Origin: Ophelia neglecta | Taxonomy: Eukaryota | Direction of reading: 5' to 3' | DNA length: 64,000 bases | NCBI GenBank assembly: GCA_965285935.1 | Contig: OZ260665.1 | Span: 30,690,001-30,754,000 of the forward strand | Part shown: positions 8,090 through 56,600 of the stretch, piece after piece | Numbering within the stretch: the stretch's first letter is position 1 | Layout: each line of letters opens with the position of its first letter | The notes under the pieces: generated by a model | The model's input: only the letters and a program-made list of their open reading frames with translations | What the model was told of the DNA's origin: nothing | Database searches by the model: none | Translations under genes and position numbers: made by a program

Positions 8090-8520
8090 CTGGCCATGCC
8101 ACCACCTCTAGCCCATGACACCACCTCCTACCCATGCCACCACAAGCAGCGCATGCCACCTCCTCCTACCCATGCCACCACAAGCAGCGCATGCCACCAC
8201 CTCCTACCCAGGCCTTACTCCAGGCAAGGCAAGAAGCTCCTACCCATGCCACCACCTCCTGCCCCGTACCCCAGGCAAGGCAAGGACCTCCTACCAATGC
8301 CACCAACTCCTGCCCCGTACCCCAAGCAAGGCCAGGACCTCCTACCCATGGCACCACCTCCTGCCCCGTACCCCAGGCAAGACCAGAACCTCCTACCCAT
8401 GCCACCACCTCCTGCCCCGTACCCCAGGCAAGACCAGAACCTCCTACCCATGCCACCACCTCCTGCCCCGTACCCCAGGCAAGGCCAGGACCTCCTACCC
8501 ATGCCACCACCTCCTGCCCC
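8090..8520. repeat. C-rich minisatellite: ~5.6 copies of a 51-bp unit (8237-8520) preceded by related ~36-39-bp units
   Basis: Unit ctcctacccatgccaccacctcctgccccgtaccccaggcaagaccagaac recurs at 8237, 8288, 8339, 8390, 8441 and 8492; it explains the overlapping repetitive ORFs in five frames. Confidence 0.95.
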
Positions 8521-28009: not shown

Positions 28010-28044
28010 TGTGGAGTTCTGTATTGATGCCGTATTCAAACTAA

Positions 28045-29340
28045 TGTAGTGGACCCAGCTACTTTGCCTATGGTGTCTTCTTTGCCATAAATTCAAAACG
28101 CGTGTGTTTGTATGGTTTTATTTGAATGGTGAAGGTTTACACGGTTTGAACTGAAATAAAATAAAAAATAAACACAACTTAACAATTAAGACAAAATTCT
28201 ACAATCACACATAAATATTGAGATCAGAAGGTTAATGACAAATTTTGCAAACAATTTAGAGAAACAATTAGACCTGAAATTGGGGTAATGAAAACACAAA
28301 TTTGGAATAGTAACAAAGGAACCGTAGAACAAAGGGGTATGTGAACAAATACATATATGGAATAGAGCTAACACTAGAAAAGTCACTAAACTTGACCAGA
28401 AGGAACATATCTACACTCACAAAACAACTAAAATAGGATTACAATATACTCAGAGGCAAGATACATATAATTTATGTAAGCAAACCTAGAATAACCTAGA
28501 ATAATACACTATGATTATATGAACAACACATATAGTTATATATATAATAACTATAATTACTGCAGTCACTAAGAAATTAATGCACAAAACTTAGTTAACC
28601 ACTACACCGTATATAAGATATAGGCAGAAACAGGGAGATAGGACAAACTGTGCTAAACACACTAATAGGACTGGCCTACAGAATAGCCAAACAAGTTAAT
28701 TAAGGTCACTGGCTTAAGAAGCCAGCTACATACACGGTACAGTGTTAAGGGGGCTAGGCCCACCCAGGCACATGGCTAACAGATGCTATAATATACAAAG
28801 GATAGAACTGACTACTGCCTTAAACACACATATTAAGCCTTTTAAAACATAAACTGAAATAGTTATAACTAAAGGCGTAGGAAAAAAATACCATCCATGT
28901 ATAGTACATGTGATGATCAGAAGTAATTGACAGTTATTACAGACTAAGGCAATAACACATGTGTGCAGATGGGCATTAAATACAAGGCAAAAACACTAAA
29001 ACCTTAAATTGGCCAGAAAATACAGCCATTAAAATTCTAGCCTTATAAAACGTCAACAATAATAACATTAAGATGTACTCACTACGCTGGCAGGAAAAAA
29101 TAGTGATGAATGGTCCAAGATGTAGTAAATCTAAAATTATTCAGGGAGCAAAGAAAAAACGGTGTCCAGGACTAGAGCTCCTAAAGACAAGCCTGCCGGA
29201 AGCCCTATCAAATTACAAGCTAATTAATTGAAGTGGGGAGCGGCTAGAAATATGTGGCTATCATGTACATAAACACACATGTACATGCAAACTAAACATG
29301 AATAAAACAAAAACAAAAATAAGGAATTTGGTCAGTTACA
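28045..29340 (-). repeat. 5' LTR of the BEL/Pao element
   Basis: Direct repeat of 20687-21982; sense-strand AATAAA at 28117-28122. Confidence 0.97.
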
Positions 29341-36034: not shown

Positions 36035-39000
36035 TTTTATTCTATTTTATTAAATGCTTTGCTATACAATTCTATGTTATTCTATGACATTCTACTATAT
36101 CTCTGTTTAATGGTATATTAATTTCTACAAGTGTTTTCATAACTTACATTCTGTTACTAAATTACGCCAGTGGATTTGAGTTTTCTAATGTGCCTTTTCT
36201 TTGCACGCCATAATAGTCTTATCATCTGCCTCTTTATTGGATTAAGATTGAACTGGGCTGTGCCATCACCTTCCGGGTGATTAGTGAGACATCTTTGTCT
36301 CAAGCTTTAATCAAGGAGACATAATCAAAATGTCAATATCGGCTGTCCCATCTTTCGTCTTCCTGTCAAAGATGCTAATCGCCTGAAGACCAGATCGATA
36401 AAAGCCAGTAACCGCCATGGACTAGGGCGATATTCGTGAGTCTACATACCAAACCCAAACCAAACTTTAACATTTCCTTGACTAAAACATTACAGGTGAA
36501 ACGCTATTTAACAGTTCAGTGATTTATTTTTCTCCAGCGTGCGACGTGTGTTCTATATAGGCAAATAAAGAAAACAAAACTTTCTAGAGGAGAAATTTGA
36601 CGAACAATTAGGCTAAAAATGCATGTTTCGTCAGTCGTCTGAGTGTTTATTGAATTTCTCCTCGATGCAATGGCAAGGGAGCACGTGTCTCTGACGTCGG
36701 AAGGTGTAAACCGAAACATCCACGCCTAATCGACCCTGTTGTGCGCGAACAACCATTCAGAATTCAACACTCACAAGAGTGACTCCTTCTTTAAAAGCCA
36801 AGTTCCATTCAAGCACCACATTGTCTCGTAAACTATGAATTTCTGCCTAGGAGCTGACAGAAAAAACAACGACAACAAAACAATGAGCGTTCAATAGTAG
36901 GTTTGTCTCCGCGGTGGCAGATTGATCAGACGTTTGGGAACTCAGGGATAGCGTTTTGGAGTAAATAAGTTTTCTCGAATGGGTTTCTGAGATACTTGTG
37001 GGCTGAATTTGCCTTAATTTAGGGTTAAGAACCACATGCATTTTCCCATTTGAATTAGGTTGTACGAATGATGGACTAACTGTGTGATAAGCGATAAAAT
37101 ACGTAAAATTTCATGCTGGCTCCACACGGAAAGCAAATGTCTTAGAAACAAGAAACACATGTTCTCAGCATATCGATTGATATCTGGTAAAGAAACTGTG
37201 ACTTGAAATAAATCCTCATTTCACAAGTTCTTAACATGAAATATTGATTTTTGGTTATAAGAATCTGTGTTATTAAAACATTTCCACCCCTAAGCGAAAA
37301 GATTAGTTTTTTTTAGCAGTGATATCGTTTTTTTGACAGACAAACATAAGAATGCAAACAGTTCGTTTAGTTCTAAAATGCAGTGAATCAATTTTATTTT
37401 GCGCAACACATCTTGCATCCATTGCTATGAGTGAGAATATAGGCTTGTATGAAAAATGTACGAACAGCGGGTTACTTGTACCTGATCACACATCACCAAT
37501 GAGTTATGCCTGTCGTTAGAGAATTGTCTATGCTCCTGACAATTCTTGACAGTTATCTTTATGTTCCTGTTATGTCCTTGTTAGTCAATCTGGCCGAGAG
37601 TCCTCGATCAATGGCCATTCTTCCTCTGGGGTTGATATTTAAAAACTTCATCATCGATAAGTTCAATGGCTGTGATATGCCTCCTACATTTGCGTGGTTC
37701 GGTCGGCCTTGAACAAGAACCTCCTAGCAGCAAATTGAACAGTCTTCTGAAACTGATATATGGCAAATAAATGCACGGTTCAGTCTACAAAAAGTTGGAG
37801 AAAAGACAGGCGTTGATACCCAGGCAGCATCATATCAATTTATGTCTACTGACAACCTGACAGTAGTAGTGATTGTTTTATGAAACTACACGTAATACTA
37901 CGAGCGGAGAAACATATTGTTTGTTAAAGCCAATTGTATAATATGCACATTCTAAAAGGCGTTGTCACCAGTGTGATGTGTTAAATTTGATATCATTAAC
38001 CAACAGATAAAGTGCGCATTACAAGCATTTTACGCTTGGCATTTCCACCGACAGGGTGTAGAGATATGCAAGGCATAATTATGAAGGAACAAATCCACAA
38101 TGTGTTTGGGAAATGGATTTTTGCAAAGGCAACAGTGTGTTTTTCCCCACAGCATGATTAGGCAATCATGAGGAAAAAACAAACAGGCACAATTTATGTA
38201 AAAATCATGGCCAGTAAATCGCACCAAATGTCTGGCAAGTTAAACATATCTGCTCAAAGCGGTGTGCTGATTTATTTATTCAATTTTTTCTTCCTGAAAT
38301 AGGCGGCGCGAGGAAACAAACTATTATGATGTGTAACGCAAATCGAGCAGCAATTCAGCAGCCACCGTGTTTGAGATTTGCCAGGTCTAGTGCCATGCTA
38401 GAAAAAAATCCTTACTCTCACGGGCTGCTTAAATATTTAGTCTTCTCATTGCTCAATACGTATTGTTTGGTAATATTTGACATCTTATATCCAAGTTTTG
38501 TTCAACATTCTGAGTTTTATTGTCCATTAAAACTAGATCTTCCATGCAGTGGGCCCTGCGTTTCCAATAACATAAGCTCCGAAGAAACTACATCAGCCGA
38601 TAGGCGCGAAAGTTCTTTACATTTTTCCTGAAAAGTTATTAATGATCTCTAATGTTTCACTTTGGGCGCCGCGTTTTACTTGAGATTTCCTCATACAATG
38701 AGGGCAATTGTAGATATTTTGATTAGACCACAGTGTTCTCTTTTTGATCATCAGTGGACATTTTTCATTATAGTTCTGGTCGATCGCTCATTTCAGTTTG
38801 GGCAAGAACGTTTTCAATCACCAGATCACATTGACAGAAACTCATGTAGGTTTAAGACTTAATGCAGCCCTGCCATTGTGATTTATTATTGATACAATCT
38901 ATTATTTCAATAAGATTAGTATTGGTTATTTCTTGCATGTCTTCGCCAGTTTTAGTCAGAAAAAAAACTTGCGTGGCATTCAGTTTCAAAATGCAGTTGT

Positions 39001-41140
39001 GTTCGTAAAATCGCTGAGAGACGTGTATAAACCAGATGGCAGGACAAAATTTTACTAGTTTACTCCAAAATAAAACTCCTCCGAACAAATAAGCAATTAG
39101 TGTCGTTTTGGGGAAAAGTTATTCGTTGATGTTTAAGACCAAAATACTGCCGTTTGTTTATAATCTGTCAAAACTAATACCGAATGTGTTGAGTATTTTG
39201 TTGTGAATGGTAATATTCGCTTGTAGCTCGACCTCAGATGGGTGGGTACACGCTATTTGCGTCTTGCCGTTAGTTAAGAGTTCTGATATATGTGTGGATG
39301 GGCTGACAATAAAACTGCTCAGGAAAGGTGTCAGAAATAAGTCAGCATCTCCCACATTGGGATACACACGTTGTCTGCCAGTTGTACTATATCCACGGGC
39401 CCTAAATCACACCACTTAGTCTAAAAAAAACTGCGTGCTTGTCGTTGAGAGAAATAATACACGTCCCTCACCACAAGCTGATTTGTAGACATATTCAATT
39501 TACTCTCTCGATAAACTTAATCAAATGTATTTTTTACCATGCAGTTGCTGGTTCTTTAATAACTCTTAATTTTCATTGAAGGATATAAAAATTCCGAATG
39601 CAGGGGATTTCTTAAAAAGTAGACGTAATAAGTCAGCAAGATGGAAAAATGTGTGCGGAGAAAGACTCGATAAAGTGTGGTACTAAGATCATCCCCATTT
39701 GTGTTTAGGGCGCGGCGCAGTAGCGTCTGCCGGTAGTGGAAGAAAAGTTGATTAAAGTGGTTCAAGGGGCTCGGTGGGCTGTTTGGTTGATTTTTGGCAC
39801 TTCATTACACATCTGGTCGGGCTGAACTGGGCGAAAACGAGGCGAGGGGGTGGCTCATCCAACAGCTACAGGATGTGATTTAAAACACTGATCTTTTGCT
39901 TCATGGCAATCGATAAGCTACTAAATGGTTCCATATACATACATCATAATATAAGTTATATACGTCTGGGACGAACAAGGCTGCATTAGCAGACAAAAGA
40001 GAAAATAAGCAAAAGCGTACCACTTTTTAAATCCGGACTATCGTCGTATATACTGTATTGTGGCAAGACTGCAGGGTTTCTTAGCGTAGGATTTTGGGAA
40101 AGCGTTTGACCGAATCGACCTAGCTTGATATGATTGATTGACAGATAAGGTTTCGAGCGGTGTAATAAAGGGTAGTAGATGAGTCACCAGTGTGTGTGGC
40201 ATTATTTGTAGGGCACGGACAAGTGGTGTGAGATAAGCTGCTGTGTGGCACGTCAGTCGCGAGCAGATGCTATGTAAACTGTGTGCCATAGCTGTGTGTT
40301 TATCATCCATCAATACTGCAATGACGGATTAGGGCGTTTAAGTCATCAACACACGTCCGGCTCCAGCAACAATGCTGTAACTGGGGTCAATAGCTAAAGA
40401 CTAACGCTGCCTGATTTATCGTCTAGATCATTTTCAATAATCTACAGCTATTTGATATAGACATTGACTTAATCGAACTGTTCAAACCTGCTGCCCCTCA
40501 GCACTGTATTTGAGCATCTGTCTGAAATGCTCAGACTTGGCCCTTGAAGCAAATCCCGCAAGGCTGCAAAGAACCGCACCACCTGGTGGCAGTAATTCTC
40601 ACTAAAAATCCATGTGCTGACCTACTAACTCCTTTGCCCTTGCGAATATTTTTCCGTCAGAAAACAAAGGCAGTAAAGAAAGAAGAAACAAGGAAAAGAA
40701 ATTGTAGCATTTGTCTTGGCACCTTCAAAATACCTGTATATATTATATTTTCCAAAGTTTTTTTCTATTTTTTCTTTAAATAATTGATCTTTTAGTTAAC
40801 TTTTCGGGTCTTACGTTTGACTACCTGTTGATGTTGTTTATTCTCGTAATGCCATATTTTACTTATTCTCGATTTGCCATCTTTTATCAGCAAGGTTTTT
40901 TCTTGCTCTGAATAGCCCCCTTCAGTCCCATTAAGGTGACTATCGTGGATTCAAAACACTTTTCTGTCCTCCTGGGGGAGTTTGATTGATAGTGATCGTT
41001 GTTGGGGCTGGGAGCGCCCAGCAGTGCCCGTCACCGGCCAAACCATGCCTTGTCGAGTAGGTGATTGTTTGGTAAGGGCTACACGAGTGCTCAGAGAGCG
41101 GCCAAGTGCTGAACTTCCGTTGATCACGAGAACCAATTGA

Positions 41141-41234
41141 ATGACTTCCGAATCTTTCAAACCGGCGATTAATCTCCTCATCCATACAAACGAGTCAAAT
41201 GTGCGCACCATCCTATTTATCTTAACTGTTCAAG
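41141..41234 (+). CDS. Candidate first coding exon of the nAChR gene (uncertain)
   Basis: ATG at 41141 opens MTSESFKPAINLLIHTNESNVRTILFILTVQ, with phase-1 GT sites after 41234 (gttatc) or 41267 (gtgtta) matching the phase of exon 2. Both donors are weak and the signal peptide is unconvincing. Confidence 0.3.
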
Positions 41235-41506
41235 GTTATCTATTTGGGAGAACAAAACGAATCTCAGGTGTTAGTAGGTAAAGCTACCGGACGTTTCTTT
41301 TACATGGCATTGGTCGCAAACAAATTTGACTGAAATGACATATTCCTTCCACTGTTGATGAATATGAGCCCATTTGTAATACAAGGAAGTTTGAACAACA
41401 TACTATAAAATATGGCATAACAACAAATAAGATACCAATCCCAGGGCTGGAACAGCTTCATATATAGTTTTACTAGTGATAAACATCGATTTTTGTTGTT
41501 TTTCAG

Positions 41507-41652
41507 AAACACTGCAAGGCCCACACGAGAAGCGACTATTGAAGGAACTGCTGCAAAACCGAGGATATAACAAACTTGAGAGGCCCATTGCCAACGAAAG
41601 CGAGGCGCTCACAGTCACGTTTGGACTTGTACTACAACAAATCATCGATGTG
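41507..41652 (+). CDS. CHRNA7: nAChR alpha7-like exon 2
   Basis: tttcag|...|gtaata; (E)[48 protein letters not shown]. Confidence 0.93.
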
Positions 41653-44600
41653 GTAATACACTACTTCACTATACTATGATCTTTTATTACTCTACAGTTT
41701 AAGAAAAAGATCACTTCTTGCAAGACAGTACTTAACAAGAATACATTTACATCTGAACAGCAGAAAATCAAACGTTTTTCAGTGTGAAAAATAAGAAAAG
41801 AAATAGTTGGAGGTTGTTGAAGTTGTAAATGGAGCTCAAAGGAAGATAAGAACGAATGCCATTTTTTCAGGTTTATCAGAGAATAGTTAACAACTGTTTC
41901 TTAGAATAGGCTAATATAAATACAACTATTAATCATAACCATAAACATTAAAAAGCCATGTAGCTAAAATCTCTTCTCCCTTCTTCCCATAATATTAAAG
42001 TTTTCTTGCAGCAAAATAATATCACGAAATGACATGTGCCATATGCGAAAAATAATGAGAAAGAACAAAATCTTTCTGAAGAAAGGACATATCGTATTTT
42101 TATATTTCGTAACAACAACGAAGAGACTATCTATTTGTGAGAAGAGTGAAGCATTGGTGCGAAAGTTTTGTTTTGAGGGCAATGCTTTAATTTTCGAAAT
42201 ATACGAGCCTCTTCAAATAAAAAAGCGCAATTAATATATTGATTTGTAGATCCCTTAAAAGAAAATATATTTTTCAAGCAATTCAAATTTCAGCATCAAT
42301 TAAGAGACGACCGTTAAGGAAGCGAGTGATTTATGGAGCCTTTGTCTAGCTGCCAATGAGTTATGATGTTAACAGTGGCGCCAAATGGGCAATACCAATG
42401 TTTTATGATAATATTTTATCGTCATTGCGCCAAAAACGCAGCAAAGGAGTTTAAACTACCCGGACAGTGGATAGTACACATTGGCCGAGCAGTGCTCCAT
42501 TGGTTACTGGTTTATTGTCCCTTAATCAGGTGACATTCGAGACAATTAGCTACCAGTTAATGGTTCCTTATTTTTTTGGTACACTTTTTTCGCGAAAGCT
42601 TTTTACAAGTTCATAGTTCCTTATTAGTTTGACATTCGAGACATGCCAATCACCAGGTCTCTCAACCAATCAAATTGCCGGATACACCATTGACCTATAA
42701 TACTTACATATTTGGTTTCCATTCTAGATAACTAGTTACCAGTTCTTAGTACACTATTCCTTTGACATCCGTGACAAACTCACTAACAGTTCCGGTTTTA
42801 TTTGTTTATTTACTTTTATTCGTTCTTCTATTCACATTTTGCAAAGCCTATTTACTAGTTCCTGGTTACCTATTCGGTTAACATTCGACATAATCTAGTT
42901 ACCAATTCCTATAAGCTAGTTACCAACTCATGTTTACCTATTCGTTACCTATTCAATATTTGATAATACATTTTCCACATAAAGTTTTTTTGGCTATGTT
43001 TTTGGTTGATATTCTACACACGCTGCCTACCGCTTCTTAGTACCGTATTCAGTAAACATCTTAGACACGCCAGTGACCAGGTCCTAATGCCTTCCTTATT
43101 CGCTATCTATCCAGTTTTCATTTGCGTCAAGTTGGTTACTTGGTACTGGTTCCTCATTCAGCTGACATTTGCGTCAAATTAGTCACTAGCTTTTTATTCA
43201 GTAGAAATTCAAGACCACCTAATTACCAGTTCCGATGTGTATTTTTTTTACCAGTTCCTCGTATATTTGTTACATTCTATTTCACAATTTACAAATCCAT
43301 TAAGAAGATAATCCTGGTTACTTATTCGGTTTATATTCGAGAAAAGCTAGTTACTTAACCAACCTGTTCTAATATATACTTGCTTGAAATTTGGGTCAAG
43401 TTGGTTACGAATTCCTGGTCCCTTATTCGGTTGATGTCGAGGAAAGCTAGTTTCAAAAGCCTTTATCAGCTGTCGGTCGAAACAAGCTACTTACTAGAAC
43501 TCATTTTCTTACTCAGTTGAACTTCAAGACAAATTAGTTAGTAGATTCGAGTAGGGTCTTGGCACAGTTGAGATTCGAGACAACTTAGTTAACATTTCCT
43601 AGACTTTTTTTCGGTGGTCGTTCGAGACAAGTTTGTTTCCATTTCCTTGTTAGCAACCACGAATAGTGACCCGGGTTACAAGGCTTAACTATTTGTCTCG
43701 AAGGAGGTGTCCGATGTACTATTTTACGAGACCGAAGGCCGAGGAAAATACTAATTGAATTAGCATTCTAGACAAGCTAACTACCAGTTCCTAGTTTCTT
43801 GGTCAGTAGTTTCTACTTATATATTTACTAGTTCCTTGTTACCTAAGCTGTGGATATTCTCAAACACTAGTTTCTGGCTCTTATTAACGTTATCGTTTCA
43901 CATCCTAAACACCAAAAATAGTCTTTTATCATAAGGGGCAAATAAATTTCACAGATACTGCAAAATTTTACTGTCTCCTTATTTAGCTATGCAAAGCTTC
44001 AACTACTTTTCATGCCGGAACTAATATTGTATATCATCTGAGGGCTGTTAACAAAATAGGAAAAATTCGGAGCAATAAGCCAGGATTGCTGGTTGGTTTA
44101 AGTTATTTAGGTTTTATGCCAAACCGTTGTTGTATACGTGTAAGGCCTGTTCTCTGTAGGTAGCTTGCCTCGAATGTCAACCGAATTATGAAATAGGAAC
44201 TAGTAGCCAGTTTAACTCGAATGTCCGCCAAATAAGGAACATGCACTAGAATCTAATTTAGACGAATTTCAACGGAATAAATGAAGAATAAGGGGCTGCG
44301 GGCTGGCTACTTGCTTGTGCCAAATGTCAAGAGAATGGCCAGATAAAGTGGTGAATATTTATCCAGGAATTTGAAAAATGACTATTCAGCCTGCAGATTT
44401 CGTATCCATGGGTCAGTAATTTCGACACCAGTGCTGTGTTTCTACCGCTAACTTCAGGCAGAAATGGACCAGCTCTTACAAAGGCCACAAGTCTCGAAAA
44501 ATAAATCCAAATTTGAACATCGGCTGTCACTGGTATATCTCTAAGTTCTTACACGGGTGGATAATTTTCACCAACCTATTGCCTGAAGTATTTGTTACTC

Positions 44601-47600
44601 AAAGAAAGTAAATTATCTATTTATCTAAATGAAGAAGAAAATGTTCTGGCTTTGTGCAGCCTCCCTCCCCTCAGCAAAACTTTTAGTAACATCATGTTCA
44701 TGAGTGAAAGGATACGAATCTCTTATCAAAGGATTCAACGTGTGATGAGAAAGCATTTCTCTTTCTTACATATATGAAACAATATCCTGACGCAACTTTA
44801 AATCGGCATGCATACGTCAGCAAACATGTTAGAGAATTCCCCGATGGAAATAGACCGGTAGTTTGACCGATGTCTTCTAGATGTTGTCCTTACTGGTCTT
44901 TATTTAGAATCCACACTGGTTTGACATCTGACTTACGAAGGACTACAACGCGATACCTTTTCCAACATCCAGTGAAAGCTTACAAAGCTTTAGTAAGCAG
45001 TGCCGATAGATCTTAGATAGTGCATGTTTTACAACCTGCTATGAACTGGTATTAATATGGGCACTTGTGCATTTCCGGTTGCCTGATCATGAAGATCCAC
45101 CCCAGAGGCTATTTAATTGTTGGTTGCAAGGAAAGTAAGATGATTAGAAATAATGTCTTGAATTGGTTTTTGAATCAAGTATTGAGTTGACTAATTTATC
45201 ACACTCTTTTCTTTTCTAGGACGAAAAGAATCAAATTTTAACTTCCAATATATGGTTAAACATGGTAAGTGCACTAGTGTGTCCTCATCATTGAGCGACA
45301 CCTGATATAGGTGTTCAACTAAGTAGGGCGCGCGCTTAATTGAGTCTCGTTTTGTCTCCACAGGACGAAAAGAACCAAATTCTCAGTACAAATCTGTGGT
45401 TAAATTTGGTAAGTCCCCAAAATGATAAAGGAGGATAAAATAAGTTGAAACTTATAAAGGTGCTGTATATACGGTAGCCCATCGTGCGAAATTTGTAAGG
45501 GTAAAGCTCCAACAATTACGCGCGCCTCGTGGACGGCATCATTTTCGTTACACCCCAAGGTGAGTGAATCTATTTTATCTACCAATGTATTGCTTTGTGT
45601 AATACATCAAACGAAAGTTAGGAAATTCGTTGTCAATCCTGTGTACTGGCTTGATTTATCGAAATAGCTATTTGTGAACAATTCTCGAGCAACATCAAGC
45701 GTGGGCGATAGTAGGAGAAATAACACCTTAATTTCCCGTTGATGTCGGCTTGGTGCACTTTTCGAAGCTGAAACTTAGTAGACAGTACCTACTGATAACT
45801 GTTAACATATCCATGGTATCTGCTCAATTTAGAATGATGCGGTTTTTTTATCCTAGCCGTTCAAATAAGTTTCCGATGCGCGTGTATGTAAGGGCACGGC
45901 GCGCCTGTAAGAAAGGGCACTAGCCGAGTAAAGGGAACGTAAAAGTAAGGCAACGCAATTTCTGTGATTGTTGCTGTTCAGTTCCTGGCTCCTGGAAAGT
46001 GGTTCTTTTGCGATCTTTTACGTACAAATGTTCGACCTTTGCCAAAAAGTCACTGATTTAAGGCCATGTTTTCCATAGAATCACAATAAAACTCATTTTC
46101 ATTGATAAATTTATGACTGCTTGTATTTCAGTTTAAAAACTACGTTTTATATATATCTATATACATGTATTTACCTGTAGCTATTGCTAATTCTCTGACT
46201 ATAAACTTATATTTTTATAGGTATGGACCCTTTGCCCGACATGAACAGGGCTTACCATTGTGGCTATAGTCCACATGGGCCAACAACATTCAAAGATCTA
46301 GCTTCACATCTCATTGAGAGTCATGGCACAAAACCCATGAAAATCCGCGAGTTTGGGATTCACCCTAAAACGGGGCAGAGTGTCATGATTTCATAAATCA
46401 TAACTGTAAACGGTTCGAATATTGTGCCTCTGGCACCTGGCTCGAATTATCGATTCCTGAACAAACTTTAATGTTAATACTCTCGAGTATATATAAGTCT
46501 TGTTAATCAATTGTACCAGTAAAATGCTTTCTCGAAATGACCTGTCTTCTTCATATATGCGCATTCAACATCTATAATGTGAACACAATATGCGTTTTTA
46601 CGAAGGGAAGTACACTGCACCTGTCAGTGATGGTGGTCTGTGATTTGATAATACATTTTAAAAGCTTGTACCTAATGATTCTAAATATATTTTTAAGCAC
46701 CATTTAATAAGGCATATTAGCCTTCATCATATCACATCAATCAGTAAATAACTCAATTAAGGTAAAAAAAACGGAGTCAATGATCAAAAATATGTCTCGA
46801 AGAACGTGGTATGCTGTATACCAGACATCCTTGGTTTGATTAATCACCAATAAGACAAAAGTATAAGGCTTAAACTTCTACTAGAGTAGCTATCGAACAA
46901 TAAAATACAGATGAAGTTGTGAATTAAAAAGTTTAAAGTCAACATAAACGAGAAACGCAACTTGCAATATAGACAATTCTGCCGTTGTAAACTTAAAACT
47001 TGATCATAGGGCCTCTGGTTTCCGATTCCTTGCAGGCACGCTTTTTAGTGCACAGCAGCCATAACAATTAGGGTAACATTTTATGTATATATGCGTCTAT
47101 GAATATATCTATAAATATATATGACTCTCGTTCCTAGTAATGACACTTAAATACATTCCATTGTTATGTGTGCTTTTTTTTTATGTTTTTTGAGACCTTG
47201 TGGCCAGTTGAACACTTCGTGACAATCCTCAAATGGGCAGCGAAACTGTTTGAGGCTGTGTTTACCAATGTCATGCTTCCGTGGATATTCCTTGGAACTG
47301 AACTTTTTCCCACATTTGGAACAAGGATGAATTTCTTTGTTTGGATTTTTGTGGCAAATCTTCCGATGATTACACACAGATGACCTCGTTGCAAACTTTT
47401 TATTGCAAAATTGGCATGAGTGCATGAGTATTTCATGGTGAGCATTGGTATGGTCCGTTAGTTGGCACTGGAACGCAAACGTTTTATCACATAGTTTACA
47501 CCTCAAACCCGCAGATGAATGTACAGTGTCCATATGGGCTTGTAAACCCTGTTTGCTAGCATACCCTTTCCCACAGGAACTGCAGAGGTAACTTCTTGAA

Positions 47601-50600
47601 TGTACCGCACTGTGGTAAATGGCATCTGATTTGGGAGCGAACTTTTTGTCACACTTTGTACAACCATGTACTTTCTCGCCGTGCATGCGGCAGCAGTGTC
47701 TCTTCAGATTGAACAACTTGGGCGTTTAAAAATCACATTCGTCGCAGGAATACGATACATCATCACCATGCACCTCGTGGACACTTGTTTCAAGGAATTC
47801 CATGATTCTGAAATGCCAAAAAACATGCACAAATCGTTTATTAAAATTAACGCTGAGAGATACAGTGCAATATATTTCACAAAACATTGTGAAATAGACA
47901 AAATGGGCCGATCATATATAGATACCGCTCTTTGCAAAGGGCGTTATAGGCTAAGTCTTGTAAAAGAACCATGAAACAGGCTACACATACAATACAGTAT
48001 TGCGCTATTTAAACCGTGATTATAAAAATAGTACGATCTGCACGAATTTGAATCTATTGAAAACATGGCCTTAAATCAGTGACTTCGTGCCAGAGGTCGA
48101 ACATTTGTAAGTAAAAAATAGCAAAAGAACCATTTTCTAAGCCTGGAACTGAACAGCAACAGTCGCGGAAAGTGCGTCGCCTTACTTTTACGTTCCCTTT
48201 ACTAGGCTAGTGCCCTTTCTTACACGCGCGCCGTGCCCTTACATACACGCGCATCGGAAACTTATTTGAACGGCTGGGATAAAAAAACCGCATCATTCTA
48301 AACTGAGCAGATACCATGGACATGTTAACAGTTATCAGTAGCTACTGTCTACTAAGTTTCAGCTTCGAAAAGTGCACCAAGCCGACAGCAACGGGAAATT
48401 AAGGTGTTATTTCTCCTACTATCGCCCACGCTTGATGTTGCTCGAGAATTGTTCACAAATAGCGATCTCGATAAATCAAGCCAGTACACAGGATTGACAA
48501 CGAATTTCCTAACTTTCGTTTGATGTATTACACAAAGACTGTCAAGCAATACATTGGTAGATAAAATAGATTCACTCACCTTGGGGTGTAACGAAAATGA
48601 TGCCGTCCACGAGGCGCGCGTAATTGTTGGAGCTTTACCCTTACAAATTTCGCACGATGGGCTACCGTAGTATAAACAGTTAAACACAATCCTTGCCTAA
48701 ACCCGATTAGATTATTTTGAATGGTGATGTGATATTTCTGTTTATTTCTTAGGCTAAACAAATCGTTTTAACCAATATCAATCCTAACTATATTCCATAA
48801 ATCAGTTCCCAAACGATAAAACATAACATAATAGCTGTTGAATTCATCAGCTTCTTTTATCCTCGCTTACGTAGCAGCTGTCTTGGAAAAAATGTCACGA
48901 ATTGTTAATTGTTATATCAATTAGCACCGTCTTTGTGTGGTTCACTTAAGAAGTATAGGAGCAAGACTTATAGAGAAAGCTGAAGCAATCAGCCAATAAA
49001 ACAGGATTAATGCTCCCATTAAAAAATTTAAAACAATAATCTTATATTTCCAATTTGATGTAATAGGTAGTCAGTTTAAAATCAATTCATAAATGGTCAT
49101 AAGCATAAAATGCATGCTTACTAATGATTAATTCTGATCACTAAATTAATTCTTTTGGCAATTTACTGATATTAATTAAGCTGAAGGTATGGTTAAATCT
49201 GAATATGTCGCTTGCTCTCTGCTTCGAAAGACAATCACGAAGCACCGAAATATAAAATAATGTCTAAACAAATCAATATGTATAAAAGGCCCTCTAATAT
49301 CTATTCATCAGCGCTTTATGAAAGCTGACGTTTTGTTTATGAAGGCATGGCATCACAATTATAATTGATATGCTGATATTATTATTTTGATACTCTGCTT
49401 CAATAGCGTAAGGCATGGATGTATCAATGGGACAAATTACATTTTTGCTATCTGACTGAACTGACTTATTTAAATAAATGATGTGCATGCTATGTTTTTG
49501 TCTTACAGTATTCGATAAATCAAGTTATTTGTTTGATTCAACTAATTTCGCTCCTACTCCGTTGGCGAAGTGTGTGAATAGTGCATTGTACGGTGTACGC
49601 TGAACGTCGCTTCGTCAATTATTAAGATCAACGATGAATAACTAGAATTAAGCCTAACGTTTTAAATTATTTAGTGGATTTTTTCCCCAAATGTCAATAA
49701 TATTGGACAAGTTATTTATACTAGATATAAGATTCCGCATGTGTAGGTATATGGAAAAACTGAAAACGTTAATCAATTAACATAAACATCGCAAGGATAT
49801 ACAATAACTACCATACACAATCACTTTTTGGAGAAAACAAATTATTTCATTATCTTATATAACGCAGAGGTCTGATATAATAGCCGGTTTACTTTGGTAA
49901 GATCAAGTTAGCTAATGAATATCTCCAAAGATACCTTAAGGAAAAGTAAAACAAAACACGATTAGGGAAATACAGGACATTTACCCTCAGGGAATAGAAT
50001 ATTGTTAAAGAGTCACACGTCAATAGAAAATTACAACAAATTATAATCATGAACAACAAATTACATTCAGGTCTATAGTTTTTCATTGGGTTAGAATCCC
50101 GACCAATCTTTTTATTATCGCGGACTTTGTGTGATTTCTTGATGAACATCTCAACATTGGAAGTAACTCTTCTTGTTGATGTCATATAGAAGTCAGATAA
50201 ATTCAACTCCTGGGTCATTAGCATTGGAAAAAACCTAGATGTCTGGCAAACTGGCACGAATTGCCTCAACCTTATTTGTAAGAAGGAAAGGGCGGTTAAA
50301 AGGTCTTGATACTTGTAGAGCTGTGGAAATATATTCCTGCTTTGAATTGCTCCCTTAATTCAATTCGATTGAGCAAGTTTCAGAAAATACAAAAGAATTC
50401 TTTTTGCCCTGAAAACTTAAGGAATCTTTGTCCGGTTTGGGTCGTAACAGAATGGCAGAGAGCGGCAATTTTCACGTGGACATAGTACACGTTTGCAAAA
50501 ATAGTTTGAAGGTATATTTTCTTTAAACCACCATTGATTATATAAAGTGAAAGACTTTGAACAACAAATGTTTAAAAGACAGATCACTTATTATGAATTG

Positions 50601-53600
50601 CTGACAATGTCATTTTACTTCAGTAATTGGAATACACTCACAACTAAATGTGTTTCAACACAGTCTGCAATCTGACCAAAACCAACTCTTCACAGTCAAA
50701 GTGACCATAACACCATTTTCAAATCCTCTGGCTCCGCGGGATGGAAAGACAAAAGTGAGACCACAAACGTCAATTTAAATCAACCTCGGAGGCACTTTAA
50801 TGGTCCTAAATAACTTCCAACCTGTTATCAGACAGGCATTTATACTGTTTTTGAGACACTGGTTATGACGGTTGTCAACCACTTTTGAGTTATAGAGGAA
50901 TTTATGAGATGGGTTGATCTTTTTGGTTATGCTTTTTTCCCAAAACTTATTCACAAAGAGCTAAACCGTTTCATGTAATGATGATAGAGAATTGAAAGAA
51001 ACTATCCCATAATAATTACGAATCTTACCTCAAATTATTGACATTTTCGTTAGCATAATAAATTTTTCCCTTCGTAGCAGAGGTAGGGTACCCTACGCAG
51101 ATCTCGCCCCATCCAATCTCGGCCGTTAGACGTTTCTGAAATAAGTCTAACAATTATAATTAAATTAAATTTGGAAGTGTTCCATTGTAATTGGTTGTAA
51201 TGCGCCCAGTCTGTATGATAATTTGTAATACGTCCTGTCTGTAGAAGTCCCGTGACTCTATCTTGTCTTGTTATGTGTTCTCCTAAAAAAAGGAGCCTCC
51301 TCGTGCCCTTATGGATAAGGCGTCTGATTTTGTATCCAAAGGTCAAGTGTTTAAGTCTTGCCATAACCATTTGTTTTCTCTTCGTTTAAAACTATAATAC
51401 CAAATGGCATCAATTGTACTATTCTAAATGCCTACACAAGGGAAAGGTAGCTGCACGGAGTTCATAAGGCAGGTACTAGTTTAATTTAGATGCATCCCTT
51501 ATGATCTAAATCTTAAATGCCGGTCACTCATTACACGGTATGCATATGTAGTAAAACGTACGAACATATTTGCGACAAAATGTTCGTTTCGATCGCACAC
51601 GGTTGACTATCCAAGTGAGGGCTTTCCCAAAATTCCTAAATTTAAGGGCCAATCACATCGCATGCAATAAATACGTCACACAGCCGTCATTAAGCCTCAT
51701 TTCTGTTTACCTGGAAAGCTGCCGGCCGGAAACGCTTAACGGCAGAGGCTGATGGCAGCAAATAATTTGTAGAGGACATTACCTCCGCTACAAAGGGAAA
51801 ATAACGGGCGTCTATGATGTAATTTAAATATGTTGCTAGGATAAATATGAAAAAGGGAGGACCTATTTGATTTAAAACGGAAAGGATCCCCCTCCCTGAA
51901 ACATGTTTCCTTCAAGTAACGTCCAAGTCACTTTATCGCTTTATCTGATACAAAATGAACCCAAGTATTAATCACGTAAATCCACTTATCAATTACAACA
52001 ACCATGCTCAAACTTAGGATTCTACTATTTTAAAGATCATCCACAGGCATATATATTTTTCGAACCAAGTTTTTCAAACAATCCCAGACATATTCTGTTT
52101 GAGAATGTCAAGTTTTTCTCTTCTAGCCATTGACGAAAACAGGACGAGACTCAATTTAGTATACACAGCTATAGCCTACTATCTCTCTACTGGAAGTTTA
52201 CAATTTACATTCTCTACATTTTATAAGTAACGCCTATTTTGATGAACACACGATTTAACATAATTTCTCTTCCAATCTTTCATACCAGTTCACCCATCCT
52301 TATTTACATTTGGTTATTTTAATTTATATTATTCGTCATTAAGTGGTTTATTAATACTTTGAATCTTTGAACCTTTATATTATTCAATCTCTGGAAATAG
52401 AAAATCTATCGTGGAATTAAAATATAATACTTTTTTTTAATGCTTTCATAAATACGTGTTTATTTGAAACATAAATAACAATGAAATATTTCATTTTAAC
52501 GTTTCCTAGGTTTGGAATGATTACAACTTGGTTTGGAATGAATCAGAGTACGGTGGTATTAAAAGCATACGAATACCACCGTTAATTATTTGGAAACCAG
52601 ATATTCTGATGTATAACAGGTAAGAACTGCGTTCAATATTCACTACATGTTGAATACGACACAATACTCATACCAAAAAAATTCTACTTTATATAATTAT
52701 GCTAAAGTAATATGTTCACAATTATCATAGGTGCGCATCCTTTTTCTGTGTTATTCATAAAATAAAATTCCCTCTCTTTGTTCACAATAAGTAAATATTA
52801 AAACCTATAAGCTGGTACTATGTTAAAGCACATATTGCGAATGTCGAATTTCTTACCATTCATGACTGCTATTTCAACGTCTCTACCAGTGCTGATGAGG
52901 ACATTGATAGTACATATCCTGCAAACATCGTTGTGAGTTCCGACGGCAGCTGCCTCTGGGTACCTCCGGGCCTCTTTCTGAGTACATGTAAAATCGACAT
53001 CACGTGGTTTCCGTTTGACGACCAGCAGTGTAAGATGAAGTTTGGGTCATGGACGTACGATGGTTTGTCGATCAATCTCACGTTGCAAGACGAGGCTGGT
53101 GGTGATATTTCAGACTTCATGCCTAACGGAGAATGGGAACTCGTGGGTAAGATTGGTCGTAGGAGAAAGACAGAAATTCCATCTTAATTAAAGAATATCA
53201 CGAACAGTAATATTTAGTTGAATCAAGGTTGTATAGGTCATGCTATATTAACCAGTACTTGGCAGGTAGTTTAATGTGACATTTCATAGAAATAGATACG
53301 ATAATAATTCACGTCCGAGTGTGCCCAAACCTCTGAATCTAGTGAAGTGATTCGAAGAAATGAAAACTTAAGCAAGTGCCTAAGTCCTTACATTGTTCAA
53401 ATAAAGATTAATATAAGCGATTCTGCTGGCCGACAGTAAATTGTTGCATTTGATCTGGAAATAAAATCGTTGTGAAAGTAAAATTAATTTGAAACCTTTC
53501 GAAAAATGTGACACTTTGCATATATGGTTGGGAACAGGAAGTTGTCAAGAGAATTCTTTCAAACGGTGTTTGCTACTGCTTTGCAAGTTATTCAAACTGA

Positions 53601-56600
53601 ATGTTTATCCATCACTATGTCTATTTAAAAAACGCATATTTCCCAAAATGCACAGTTTCAAGAGTCCTTCCTCTGTGCACGGGTATACTTGCACTGGTAC
53701 ATTAGTCATTTTAGTCATTGTCTTTAGTATTTTACTTACATGTATATTGCCTATCCTTATACTCGCAGTTGACTATTCAATCAACCTCTTTATATGATAT
53801 TCGAAAGCTGATACTATATGTTTCTCAATCCATTGACCACACCGACGATAAGGTATAAAGAGGAACTTGACGAAGGTCCTTGATGGAACTCCATGTGTCG
53901 TTACTATCTGATGAAGCTTCCTTACGTCCTCTATCTATCAGTCCTTTGTGCCTTTTTCATTTTCTGTGATTCTGAAGACTTTATGGGAAAAGTACAATAA
54001 CAATAAAGACGTCCTTGTGGATGATTTTGTATTTTGTGTAGGGTTTCTAAAAGCGTTTTTCCTTACCTAATTATAGGCTGAGGGCATTTTTAACACTTGC
54101 CGTACCCAGTTAAAGAGTCGATGCTTTGACATTACCTGCAGTACGGCCAAGGGTCGGATCATTTGGCAGGCCTTCAGTAAACAAGAATTTTAAGCAAATA
54201 ATCTGGCGTTAAATTTTTTTGGATTCCAGATTTACTAAGTCGTGTTTTTCCCTTGAAGTCTTAGCAATTATAGAATGTGATTCAAACTATAACAATAAAT
54301 ATTTGTTTTATTAGTCTCTCTTTTTCAATGTTAGATTACTTCTGATCGTCACTGTCGTATGTATGAGCATATTTCGAAGGCCTTTACTAAGGCAATGAAC
54401 CAATTCGGGTAGTTCGAATGTTTGTATTGCATGGTACACTGTTATTTTGATTTTTGGTTCACACAATGATTAAGCTGCTTTTATATGTTCAATGCTTCCT
54501 CTAAGTTTAAAATAAACCTTTATAGAGTCTTTTTGTTCAATGACAGCATATGACAATACAAAGATGCAGACGTAATTGACGCTTATTTTGCCCTGCTTGC
54601 GTATCTTTGCAGGTGCACCGGTCAAGAGGAATGTTGTCCAATATGAGTGTTGTCCCGAGCAATATATCGATGTAACATTTACAATTAAAATACGCCGACG
54701 AGTTTTGTACTACTTGTCAAATTTGGTTGTCCCCTGTGTCATGATGTCGATCCTCTCGATGGGGGTGTTCTATATGCCTCCCGATGCAGGCGAAAAGGTC
54801 ACCTGCGGTAGGTTTCCATACCTTCATTATCTCTATTTCACCACAGCCCTGCTTAATTTTCGTTTATTTTCTGTTTTCATGGTATAGGTGTGCCCGCAAA
54901 GCGAAGTGTCGTACAGTACGACTGCTGCCCTGAGCATTACATAGACATTACTTTTACAATCCACATACGCAGGAGAACCCTATATTACGGGTTTAACTTG
55001 ATTATCCCCTGTGTTTTGATATCTTCCATGGCACTACTGACCTTCACATTACCCCCGGACGCGGGCGAGAAGATCTCGTTAGGTAGGTGTGAACTATCGC
55101 GACACGAGCACGTGGTCCTCCTTCCCCCCTTTTGCACATTTTTATTCGCTTTTTTGTCGTATGCACCGGACCAACATTCTAGATGTTCCTCTATGTCGCT
55201 CTGAGGCTATCTCTTCTTTGGAAACTGACCTCTGAACTTTGATTTTGACTTAGTTTTTTAAGTAACGTTGATGTTCAGCGTTTTAATAAATAAAACATTT
55301 GGTTCAGGTATACAATGTCAATTTTTTTCAGCTGTCGGATTTTATTTTTCCATGACAAAATAATTTTCGTTTCGATCGATTTCCGAGACATCGGTGAAGG
55401 GTGACGCGAAGAAGATTAGTTACAGCTCTATAAGAATATTTATTAATACACATTATAACATATACATATAATTGTTTATACGGCTATTTAACGACATTCC
55501 ATCAGTTACTGAAAATTTTCATTCCATTTGCCATAACTTTTTAATCCATAAAGATAACAATTTCAAATAAAATACATAAGCTTTCTCGTCTATCAAACTT
55601 TCTTACGGGGTTAATCGGTTTAAAATTTATCAGGAGACACCAGAGATACGTTCCCTTAAAGAGGTGAGGGGTCTCAAAATTTGAGGATTTTCCGTAAAAA
55701 TGATTGTAAAGAATGTAAAAGCACGGTTACAACAGTTACAAATGTTTAAAATTGAGTGCAAAAATCTTGACCGGGAGCGCAAACCGGAGAAAGTCGCGTG
55801 TGTTTGGCGCATGCGCAGTAAACAGGAACCAGAACTGCTCCCAAGGATCCCGCGCTCGAAAATCGTGAGTGAATATCTTTATTTTTAACAATATTAAGGA
55901 GTTTTATCCAAAACCGCGTTACAATGCAATGTAACAAGTGTTCGCGATTCACGTAGATACTTAATTTATATTTATATTTTTGCATTTCTGGTAAATCGCA
56001 AAGCATGAGTAAATTAGAAAAGAAAAAAGTATAAACAAAACACTAAAGACAGCGCAGATCTCCAGTTTAGCATTGATCTATTATTGTAAGAGATATGTCA
56101 CTGAAATGTTATCTCCATCATTTTATTGTTTTCCTGCATTAGTTTCCAATGATAATGAACCTCAACCGGAAGAGATTGTCGTTGGCATTGACTTCATGGA
56201 CCAACCGAGAGGTCATGGTAAGTCTGTAGTGAATGCTACGTGATTTCCGGTGATTTTATGTTTCGGTTACAAATATATTAACTAGGCTACAAATGGATAA
56301 ATGTTAAGATTCCGATCAAACTTTAATTCACTTTACAGTGTCAGAAGGTGAAAAGACAAGTCACAGTAGGTGAAAAGACAAGTCAAACAGATCAATTTTC
56401 AAGTGATCCTGGCTGAAGCCTCTTGTGTTAATTTGTTGGGCGTTCCAGTGCGTTCCGCTGCATTCTGATGCGTTCCTGTATTCAGTGAGAGCAGATTCCT
56501 ACCACCATACCGAAGACGATGTGGAGGCTGCACAGGATATTGAGGAGATAGAGTTGAAGGTCCAACCACCCACAGCTTTTGCCTTTCTTTCTCCTAGACT

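What the first reader, a model, noticed from the sequence alone, without database searches (positions are those of the whole stretch)
45220..45408. Duplicated 45-nt exon 3a/3b (loop D), as in insect alpha6, in an apparently non-insect genome
Seen: [15 protein letters not shown] and [15 protein letters not shown] (11/15 identical), 99 nt apart, each with a good acceptor and a gtaagt donor; the loop D Trp is kept in both. Known: Drosophila alpha6 has alternative 45-nt exons 3a/3b. Inference: either the 3a/3b pair is much older than insects or the same exon was duplicated convergently. With 7a/7b it gives up to four subunits varying the complementary face (loop D) and principal face (loop C) of the ACh site independently. 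Because 45 and 195 are multiples of 3, double inclusion stays in frame, so NMD cannot enforce exclusivity and an active mechanism is needed.
Basis: partly seen in the sequence, partly recalled or inferred. Interest (0 to 1): 0.75.

Follow-up and report, generated by a model that had tools for sequence, protein, structure and literature searches.

The report
Twin loop-D exons in nicotinic receptor
An annelid-like invertebrate's alpha7-type nicotinic receptor gene carries two intact side-by-side versions of one 45-base exon, the either-or arrangement long known from insects, and gene models show similar pairs in several other invertebrate phyla.

Summary
Two 45-nt exons lie at 45220-45264 ([15 protein letters not shown]) and 45364-45408 ([15 protein letters not shown]), 99 nt apart. 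Each has an AG acceptor and a GTAAGT donor. They sit between exon 2 and exon 4 of a single-copy alpha7-group nAChR gene.

The host is not an arthropod. The nearest named orthologues are annelid (Capitella, Ridgeia).

The two copies are old and constrained: dS about 1.2, dN/dS 0.135, unrelated flanks. DNA contigs of the sample span both.

No RNA run exists for this organism, so use of both exons is inferred, not shown.

The arrangement is not unique. Capitella, a chiton and Priapulus have both copies in line in their gene models. RefSeq isoforms of two nemerteans and Aplysia swap one exon 3 for another. Insects, crustaceans, ticks, a spider and horseshoe crab also have pairs. Seven annelid-like metagenome contigs show one exon 3; four of them cover the whole exon 2 to exon 4 interval.

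The arthropod a and b types are clearly orthologous. No non-arthropod copy matches the arthropod b type, so ancient versus repeated origin stays open.

In this species the loop-D Trp and the Q57-equivalent Asn are identical in both copies. The four changes are conservative.

The scan had already noted exon 7a/7b in this gene and a 4a/4b pair in another nAChR gene of this genome.

The parts
41507..41652 (+). Exon 2 of the alpha7-group nAChR gene (ends ...QQIIDV, phase 0). It is followed by donor gtaata.
   Evidence: tblastn of database orthologues; sequence; Pfam Neur_chan_LBD profile positions 1-40
45220..45264 (+). Exon 3a, 45 nt, [15 protein letters not shown]. Acceptor ttttcttttctAG, donor GTAAGT.
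45265..45363 (+). 99-nt spacer intron between 3a and 3b. It is a U2-type GT...AG intron. Candidate branch sites are TTAAT (A at 45339, 74 nt from the 3a donor) and CTAAG (about 45321). Two letters differ in the sample's contigs (45302, 45307).
   Evidence: sequence; fold of the intron alone z -1.64, not significant; read laying
45364..45408 (+). Exon 3b, 45 nt, [15 protein letters not shown]. Acceptor ttttgtctccacAG, donor GTAAGT.
45465..48674 (.). Long-TIR transposon in the 3b-to-exon-4 intron, 56 nt after the 3b donor. It is present in the assembled haplotype and absent from another DNA form in the same sample, so it is recent and not part of any conserved splicing control.
52510..52619 (+). 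Exon 4, 110 nt ([16 protein letters not shown]...MYN).
52890..53146 (+). Exon 5 with the Cys-loop ([15 protein letters not shown]). It was used as the search query and as the orthology marker.
54613..55082 (+). Exon 7a and 7b pair (loop C and M1) of the same gene. This is context and the subject of another finding.

Best explanation
What it is. These are two functional, alternatively used copies of exon 3 in the only alpha7/alpha6-group nicotinic receptor gene of an annelid-like spiralian. Each mRNA most likely takes one of the two (exon 2-3a-4 or exon 2-3b-4). This gives two subunits that differ at 4 of 15 residues of the beta2 strand that carries loop D. The differing positions align with human alpha7 precursor T73, T74, I76 and M80. 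The loop-D Trp and the Asn aligned with alpha7 Q79 are the same in both.

Likely effect. Alpha7-type subunits usually form homopentamers (established knowledge, recalled). The exchanged strand would therefore be present at every binding interface. The changes are conservative, so I expect a modest tuning of affinity, gating or assembly rather than a switch of pharmacology.

How the choice is made (inferred). I take it to be a competition between the two acceptors, set by cell-specific factors. It is not enforced by NMD (in frame), nor by U2/U12 incompatibility (both donors are GTAAGT), nor clearly by steric hindrance (the intron is 99 nt and the candidate branch points lie 57-74 nt from the 3a donor). 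Some double inclusion is therefore expected, as in Bombyx and Ixodes.

Origin. The copies are old. It is unresolved whether the pair descends from the same duplication as the arthropod 3a/3b pair.

Shown versus inferred. Shown: anatomy, gene identity, single-copy status, age and constraint of the copies, and similar pairs in other phyla. Inferred: splicing of both exons, exclusivity, and functional effect.
For: Anatomy.

Gene identity:
- Pfam LBD and membrane domains are found exon by exon.
- The 13 best solved relatives of exon 5 are all human alpha7, at about 106 bits against 86.9 for beta2.
- tblastn gives a full gene model.

Single copy: of 58 own-genome matches to exon 5, the next best after the gene itself is 52% identical.

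Only this gene has the pair: 13 places in the genome have a 45-nt AG..GT DEKNQ exon, and only this one has a second copy within 1.5 kb.

Age and constraint:
- 4.5 synonymous changes on 7.5 sites and 5.5 non-synonymous on 37.5 sites give dS 1.2, dN 0.16, ratio 0.135, Fisher p 0.034.
- No letter differs in either exon between the assembly and the sample's contigs, while 2 differ in the 99-nt spacer.

Room for one copy only: Pfam profile positions 41-56.

Use as alternatives in relatives: RefSeq isoforms of equal length differ only in exon 3 in Lineus longissimus (X1/X2, 480 aa), Tubulanus polymorphus (X1/X2, 482 aa) and Aplysia californica (X1/X2, 486 aa).

Same pair in the nearest named orthologue: Capitella teleta CAPTEDRAFT_221893 has both exon 3 copies and both exon 7 copies in line.

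Leaky exclusivity in known cases: passages of PMC1919356 (Bombyx type III) and PMC13578988 (Ixodes variant A, with both exons, gave no current in oocytes).
Against: - There is no RNA evidence for this organism. The three runs that hold the stretch are DNA-like and none is on record as RNA. The runs laid were contigs with no joints.
- The selection test rests on 45 nt.
- Seven annelid-like orthologue contigs from metagenomes show a single exon 3. Four of them (L047, L094, L082, L104) cover the whole exon 2 to exon 4 interval. So the pair is dispensable in some relatives.
- The four residue differences are so conservative that a functional difference is not obvious.
- I could not see the evidence behind the RefSeq isoforms. 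The Capitella and chiton models show both copies in line, which could mean double inclusion or simply an ab initio read-through.
Confidence: 0.7

Rival explanations
1. Only one of the two copies is ever spliced. The other is a silent relic of a duplication (a pseudo-exon).
For: There is no RNA evidence here. Relatives with a single exon 3 do without a second copy. The transposon 56 nt after the 3b donor in the assembled haplotype could disturb 3b use in that allele.
Against: - At about 22% base divergence, both copies keep an open frame, the AG acceptor, the GTAAGT donor and 11 of 15 residues, including D1, E2, K3, N4, Q5, N10, W12 and L13.
- dN/dS is 0.135, whereas a decaying copy would push it towards 1.
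- The flanks have lost all likeness while the exons have not.
- Other spiralians are annotated as using both versions.
Confidence: 0.12
2. Both copies are normally included together, so the mature subunit has a 15-residue repeat in the beta2 strand.
For: Inclusion of both is in frame. The 99-nt spacer has normal splice signals. Database models of Capitella, the chiton Liolophura, Priapulus, Limulus, ticks, crustaceans and many insects read both in line. Ixodes variant A and Bombyx type III carry both.
Against: - The Pfam ligand-binding profile has room for one copy.
- The Ixodes double form gave no functional receptor in oocytes (abstract of PMC13578988).
- In insects the vast majority of transcripts carry one copy (passages of PMC1919356).
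- RefSeq isoforms of Lineus, Tubulanus and Aplysia swap one for the other at equal length.
- In-line models are what a gene predictor produces for in-frame tandem exons.
Confidence: 0.08
3. On origin: the pair arose by a duplication within spiralians or annelids, independent of the arthropod 3a/3b duplication. On this reading the same exon of the same gene was duplicated convergently.
For: - In a leave-one-out control, 18 of 18 arthropod copies sort to their own a or b type. Of 14 non-arthropod copies, 0 are nearer to the arthropod b type (12 nearer to a, 2 ties).
- Partners within a species share lineage-specific residues: Lineus 13/15, Capitella 13/15, Tubulanus 12/15 with D at position 14 in both.
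- The partner of the conserved QIIHTNIWL type differs wildly between Lineus and Aplysia.
- A single exon 3 is seen in seven annelid-like contigs and in the listed models of Helobdella, Owenia, Lingula, Lymnaea, Pomacea and Pinctada.
- This gene also grew other tandem exon clusters in different lineages: exon 7 in spiralians and an isopod, exon 4 in Lineus, and the M2 exon in arthropods and Priapulus.
Against: Independent origin needs the same 45-nt exon of the same orthologue to duplicate in at least four phyla, while none of the 12 other places with such an exon in this genome has a pair. Fifteen residues carry too little signal to reject orthology, and treekit refuses under 20 columns. Parallel change or gene conversion could erase a/b signatures. 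A protein model with a single exon 3 does not prove that the gene has one.
Confidence: 0.5

Closest known systems
Insect nAChR alpha6 exons 3a/3b (Drosophila, Tribolium, Bombyx and others). Source: passages of PMC1919356, which cites Grauso et al. 2002. I did not see the Grauso paper itself.
   Same: The same 45-nt exon of the orthologous alpha7-group gene is duplicated in tandem. Both copies encode DEKNQ....N.WL.. with the loop-D Trp, and double inclusion is in frame. The window's first copy is of the arthropod a type (mean identity 11.8 to a, 9.4 to b).
   Different: The host is annelid-like, not an arthropod. The window's second copy is not of the arthropod b type (12.3 to a, 10.7 to b). 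Position 14 is N in both copies here, against N versus S/K/T in all 9 arthropod pairs compared. The spacer is 99 nt here, against about 650-2000 nt in five arthropod-like contigs. The second variable cluster is exon 7 (loop C and M1) rather than the arthropod M2 exon.
Ixodes ricinus alpha6 variants A (3a+3b) and B (3b only), PMC13578988 (abstract and passages seen)
   Same: It is a tandem exon 3 pair outside insects. It shows that in-frame double inclusion really occurs.
   Different: It is a chelicerate with arthropod a and b types. Function was tested there in oocytes, but nothing has been tested here.
Capitella teleta CAPTEDRAFT_221893 (gene model P0188)
   Same: It is the nearest named orthologue: exon 5 72/86, exon 9 37/38, exon 4 28/36. 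It has two exon 3 copies and two exon 7 copies in the same order.
   Different: Its second copy has R at position 14 (DEKNQILQTNIWLRL). Both window copies are 13/15 identical to Capitella's first copy, so one-to-one orthology of the copies cannot be read off. Only a protein model was seen, not its DNA.
RefSeq isoforms of Lineus longissimus, Tubulanus polymorphus (nemerteans) and Aplysia californica alpha7-like genes
   Same: Isoforms of equal length differ only in exon 3, so they are annotated as substitution of one copy for the other. Lineus also has the exon 7 pair.
   Different: They belong to other phyla. The genomic order of the copies was not seen, and I could not see the evidence behind the isoforms.

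Membership tests
alpha7-group nicotinic acetylcholine receptor subunit (Cys-loop ligand-gated channel) | Neur_chan_LBD and Neur_chan_memb domains | tested here: met
   Pfam, exon by exon: PF02931 in exons 2, 4 and 5; PF02932 in 7a, 7b and the last exon. All are above the curated cut-offs.
alpha7-group nicotinic acetylcholine receptor subunit (Cys-loop ligand-gated channel) | Cys-loop (two Cys 13 residues apart) and the vicinal Cys pair of loop C (alpha-type) | tested here: met
   [15 protein letters not shown] in exon 5; YECC in 7a and YDCC in 7b.
alpha7-group nicotinic acetylcholine receptor subunit (Cys-loop ligand-gated channel) | Closest to alpha7 rather than to other subunit classes | tested here: met
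   The 13 best PDB rows for exon 5 are human alpha7 (103.7-106.6 bits). The next is beta2 at 86.9. Database orthologues are named alpha-7-like or alpha6.
Tandem mutually exclusive exon pair | Neighbouring exons of equal length and phase, homologous, each with its own splice sites | tested here: met
   45 nt each, phase 0 to 0, 11/15 residues and 35/45 bases alike, AG and GTAAGT at both.
Tandem mutually exclusive exon pair | The protein domain has room for only one copy | tested here: met
   Exon 2 ends at Pfam profile position 40 and exon 4 starts at 57.
Tandem mutually exclusive exon pair | Both copies kept by purifying selection | tested here: met
   dN/dS 0.135, Fisher p 0.034, on 45 nt only. 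No exon difference between the assembly and the sample's contigs. The sample is small.
Tandem mutually exclusive exon pair | Transcripts carry exactly one of the two | not testable with these tools
   No RNA run holds the stretch. Read laying laid DNA contigs only, with no joints.
Orthologue of the arthropod alpha6 3a/3b pair | Same exon of the orthologous gene | tested here: met
   Gene model and per-exon identities. The gene is single-copy in this genome.
Orthologue of the arthropod alpha6 3a/3b pair | First copy of a type and second copy of b type (as in 18 of 18 arthropod copies) | tested here: not met
   The first copy is a-like (11.8 vs 9.4), but the second copy is also a-like (12.3 vs 10.7). 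A tree could not be built on 15 columns.

The most novel reading that the evidence does not exclude
The exon 3 (loop D) either-or pair is an ancestral protostome feature of the alpha7-group receptor gene, more than half a billion years old. On this reading it was kept in arthropods, priapulids, annelids, nemerteans and molluscs, and lost repeatedly (honeybee, clitellate-like annelids, some molluscs). The a/b signatures outside arthropods would have been blurred by parallel change or gene conversion. That would make it one of the oldest conserved mutually exclusive splicing events in a neurotransmitter receptor.
Probability: 0.33. Interest if true: 0.65.

Novelty: new member of a known kind. 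Interest (0 to 1): 0.45.

Why it matters
Alpha6 exon 3a/3b is a textbook example of receptor diversification in insects, and alpha6 is the target of spinosad. This finding places the same device in an annelid-like animal. The follow-up also found it in gene models or isoforms of an annelid, two nemerteans, two molluscs and a priapulid. I found no paper in the held library that says so.

Either reading is of interest to people who study receptor evolution and alternative splicing. One reading is an ancient pair. The other is repeated duplication of one 45-nt exon, as has been argued for ion channels by Copley 2004 (recalled, not seen).

There are two practical points:
- Gene predictors read both copies in line (Capitella, chiton, Priapulus, many arthropods), which gives proteins with a spurious 15-residue repeat.
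- Together with 7a/7b, the gene could give four subunits from one locus.

Tried and rejected
- RNA evidence. The look-up of sequencing runs gave three DNA-like holders from one sample and no RNA run, so splicing could not be read. Read laying was used only to check the assembly.

I therefore could not fetch the Capitella, Lineus, Aplysia, chiton or Priapulus loci. Genomic order, intron lengths and conserved intron elements of their pairs were not seen. Instead I used protein models and one metagenome pattern scan.

- Tree of the copies. treekit refuses 15 columns because 20 are needed. I did not run another tree program round that limit. I used identity tables with an arthropod leave-one-out control instead.

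- A spiralian S9/M15 versus T9/L15 dichotomy (window, Tubulanus, chiton). I considered it as a sign of orthology and rejected it. The M-type copy is first here and second in the chiton model, and Lineus and Capitella lack the dichotomy.

- RNA structure as enforcer of exclusivity. The 315-nt region folds better than shuffles (z -3.3, 0 of 100). The 99-nt spacer alone does not (z -1.64, 20 of 300 shuffles at least as stable). In that fold the 3a donor pairs with the stretch holding the candidate branch site. This is a lead, not a finding, and no comparative data were available.

- Pairing between the spacer and the left arm of the downstream transposon. I noticed it by eye and dropped it. The transposon is absent from another DNA form in the same sample.

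- Other enforcement mechanisms. U2/U12 incompatibility is excluded because both donors are GTAAGT. NMD is excluded as enforcer because 45 is a multiple of 3.

- Steric hindrance. It is not clearly enforced, since candidate branch points lie 57-74 nt from the donor. The minimum distance I compare this with is recalled, not tested.

- A third copy. None was found in 38000-56000.

- Deuterostome or cnidarian pairs.

Supplementary Fig. S1 of PMC13578988 and the supplements of PMC1919356 may hold exon alignments that bear on the a/b typing.
Full report
**Observation.**
- Window 45220-45264 reads [15 protein letters not shown] and 45364-45408 reads [15 protein letters not shown]. My first translations were one base off.
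- The copies share 11 of 15 residues and 35 of 45 bases.
- They are separated by 99 nt. Each follows a pyrimidine tract and AG, and each is followed by GTAAGT.
- Likeness between the copies ends at the splice consensus: the repeat family is 53 nt long, and the flanks are 30-48% alike.
- No other AG-45 nt-GT open exon with Trp at codon 12 exists in 38000-56000.
- Contigs of three DNA runs of one sample cover both exons in one piece. They differ from the window at two letters of the spacer and at none in the exons.

**The gene.**
- tblastn with database orthologues gives a + strand gene:
  - exon 2: 41507-41652
  - exons 3a and 3b
  - exon 4: 52510-52619
  - exon 5: 52890-53146
  - exons 7a and 7b: 54613-55082
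  - later exons, up to 62239
- Pfam finds the ligand-binding domain in exons 2, 4 and 5, and the membrane domain in 7a, 7b and the last exon. Exon 2 covers profile positions 1-40 and exon 4 covers 57-91, so the domain has room for one 15-residue exon.
- The 13 best solved relatives of exon 5 are all human alpha7.
- In an alignment of the Lineus orthologue with human alpha7, exon 3 corresponds to D66-M80 of the precursor chain, counted. The Trp is W77. That this is W55 of the mature protein, and that the residue two further on is Q57 of loop D, is recalled.
- The spliced model was never joined. All searches were exon by exon or used database proteins.

**The host.**
- The genome has 762 Mb in 223 contigs.
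- Per exon, the nearest named proteins are annelid. Capitella gives exon 4 28/36, exon 5 72/86 and exon 9 37/38. Ridgeia gives exon 9 36/39 and exon 10 87/165.
- Arthropods are lower in exon 5 (55-59/87) and in exon 9 (23-27 of 35-39). Exon 7b is nearest to nemerteans (Lineus 59/64), and exon 2 is uninformative.
- The animal is therefore a spiralian, probably an annelid, and not an arthropod. This agrees with earlier scan notes s1-748358 and s1-751466, which I did not take as evidence.

**Single copy, and the only gene with the pair.**
- Exon 5 finds 58 places in the animal's own genome. After the gene itself, the best is 52% identical.
- A pattern for DEKNQ......W found 21 matches, against 5 for the reversed control.
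- 13 places have a 45-nt AG..GT exon of this kind, and only this one has a second copy within 1.5 kb.

**Age and constraint.**
- Between 3a and 3b there are 4.5 synonymous changes on 7.5 sites and 5.5 non-synonymous on 37.5. This gives dS 1.2, dN 0.16, ratio 0.135, Fisher p 0.034.
- The sample is tiny. It fits an old duplication with both copies under purifying selection, and it does not fit a decaying relic.

**Expression.** No run on record as RNA holds the stretch. Use of both exons in this animal is an inference.

**Relatives: gene models with both copies in line.**
- I used a database model that has both exons in line (a mosquito, P0040) as the query for its exon 2-4 region. This pulled out other in-line models: at least 25 of the 120 listed. 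That count is 22 by motif count, plus the query, plus Ixodes P0186 and Limulus P0187 read by eye.
- The same search with Capitella added crustaceans, Priapulus and a chiton.
- Non-arthropod in-line models:
  - Capitella teleta: [15 protein letters not shown] + DEKNQILQTNIWLRL, with 7a and 7b also in line
  - Priapulus caudatus: DEKNQIMLANIWLQM + [15 protein letters not shown]
  - Liolophura sinensis: DEKRQVILTNVWLEL + DEKNQILYASIWLDM

**Relatives: isoforms and single-exon cases.**
- A third search, on the variable C-terminal half of the Capitella protein, gave 81 hits, including spiralian orthologues.
- Cluster members show RefSeq isoforms of equal length that differ only in exon 3 in Lineus longissimus, Tubulanus polymorphus and Aplysia californica.
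- Lineus also alternates exon 4 and exon 7, and Owenia alternates exon 7.
- The listed models of Lingula, Owenia, Helobdella, Lymnaea, Pomacea and Pinctada have one exon 3. That does not prove the genes have one.
Five of them have pairs, all arthropod-like.
- Seven contigs carry annelid-like orthologues, with exon 5 70-76% identical to the window. Each shows one exon 3. Exon 2 to exon 4 is fully covered in four of them. Two of them (L094, L104) cover exon 5 to exon 7, and L094 also reaches exon 8; each shows a single exon 7.
- Their exon 3 resembles that of the leech Helobdella, so they may be clitellates. Their organisms are not named.

**One origin or several?**
- In nine arthropod pairs, every first copy is nearer to the other first copies and every second copy is nearer to the other second copies (18 of 18, leave-one-out). 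The arthropod pair is therefore one old orthologous pair.
- Of 14 non-arthropod copies, none is nearer to the arthropod b type: 12 are nearer to a, and 2 tie. Both window copies are a-like.
- Partners within a species often share lineage-specific residues (Lineus 13/15, Capitella 13/15, Tubulanus 12/15).
- These points favour separate duplications, or blurring by parallel change or conversion. On the other side, the same exon of the same orthologue is paired in at least five phyla, while no other nAChR gene of this genome has such a pair.
- Fifteen columns cannot carry a tree. I put about 0.5 on independent origin and about 0.33 on a protostome-wide origin, with the rest undecidable.

**What it changes.**
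- Position 14, aligned with alpha7 Q79 of the precursor, differs between the copies in 13 of 16 pairs compared. It is N in both window copies, and also equal in Lineus and Tubulanus.
- Here the differences are T/S, S/T, I/L and M/L at positions 8, 9, 11 and 15. I therefore expect fine tuning rather than a pharmacological switch.

**How exclusivity might work.**
- NMD cannot enforce it, because double inclusion is in frame.
- U2/U12 incompatibility is excluded by the two GTAAGT donors.
- The spacer is 99 nt, with candidate branch sites 57-74 nt from the 3a donor, so steric block is not evident. The minimum distance I compare this with is recalled.
- The spacer alone is not significantly structured (z -1.64), although the 315-nt region is (z -3.3).
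- In Bombyx and Ixodes, transcripts with both exons exist, and the Ixodes double form gave no current (passages and abstract). So strict exclusivity need not be assumed.

**Literature.**
- Six searches found the pair described for insects and for Ixodes ricinus, and no paper describing it outside arthropods.
- The paper on lophotrochozoan nAChR expansion has 0 occurrences of 'alternative splicing' or 'isoform'.
- The library lacks most subscription journals, and supplements were closed.

**Verdict.** This is a real, old, constrained tandem exon 3 pair in a non-arthropod. It is a new member of a known kind. Similar pairs are already implicit in public gene models of several phyla. The question of ancient or convergent origin is sharpened but not settled.

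Noticed in passing
window 45465-48674: The long-TIR transposon, which carries a C2H2 zinc-finger ORF at 47147-47716 on the minus strand, sits 56 nt after the 3b donor. It is polymorphic. A contig of the same sample runs from 45464 straight into sequence matching 48669-48698 (2 mismatches). Other contigs bridge into the element. The insertion is therefore recent and probably heterozygous.
   Followed up: partly
window 22103-28096 (- strand): An uninterrupted 1997-residue ORF of a Pao/BEL-type LTR retrotransposon. Pfam hits: Peptidase_A17, DUF1759, DUF5641 and Integrase_H2C2 above cut-off; rve and RVT_1 below cut-off. Observed only.
   Followed up: partly
window 8096-8672: Overlapping ORFs in several frames on both strands, made of proline-rich repeats (PMPPPPAPYPRQ...), in a G+C-richer stretch with strong negative GC skew.
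   Followed up: no
proteins P0429, P0355, P0430, P0427, P0428 (Lineus longissimus isoforms): The nemertean orthologue is annotated with three separate either-or exon clusters in one gene: exon 3, exon 4 and exon 7.
   Followed up: partly
proteins P0290 (Priapulus), P0020 (Armadillidium), P0024 (Ephemera); locus L105: Other tandem exon clusters of the same gene are read in line by gene predictors. There are two M2 exons in Priapulus, two loop C/M1 exons in an isopod, and four M2 exons in a mayfly and in arthropod-like contig L105.
   Followed up: no
window 45209-45230 and 45346-45374: In the predicted fold, each exon's pyrimidine tract pairs with the purine-rich start of its own exon (GACGAAAAGAA). 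In the fold of the spacer alone, the 3a donor pairs with the stretch holding the candidate branch site. This may be a by-product of composition.
   Followed up: partly
loci L047, L094, L104 (metagenome contigs Ga0209367_1028413, Ga0209781_1007960, Ga0209363_1002249): Annelid-like orthologues in metagenome contigs have a compact gene (exon 2 to exon 5 spans about 2 kb in L047 and L094, about 4.5 kb in L104). They have a single exon 3, and L094 and L104 have a single exon 7 of the 7b type. So both pairs are missing in that lineage.
   Followed up: partly
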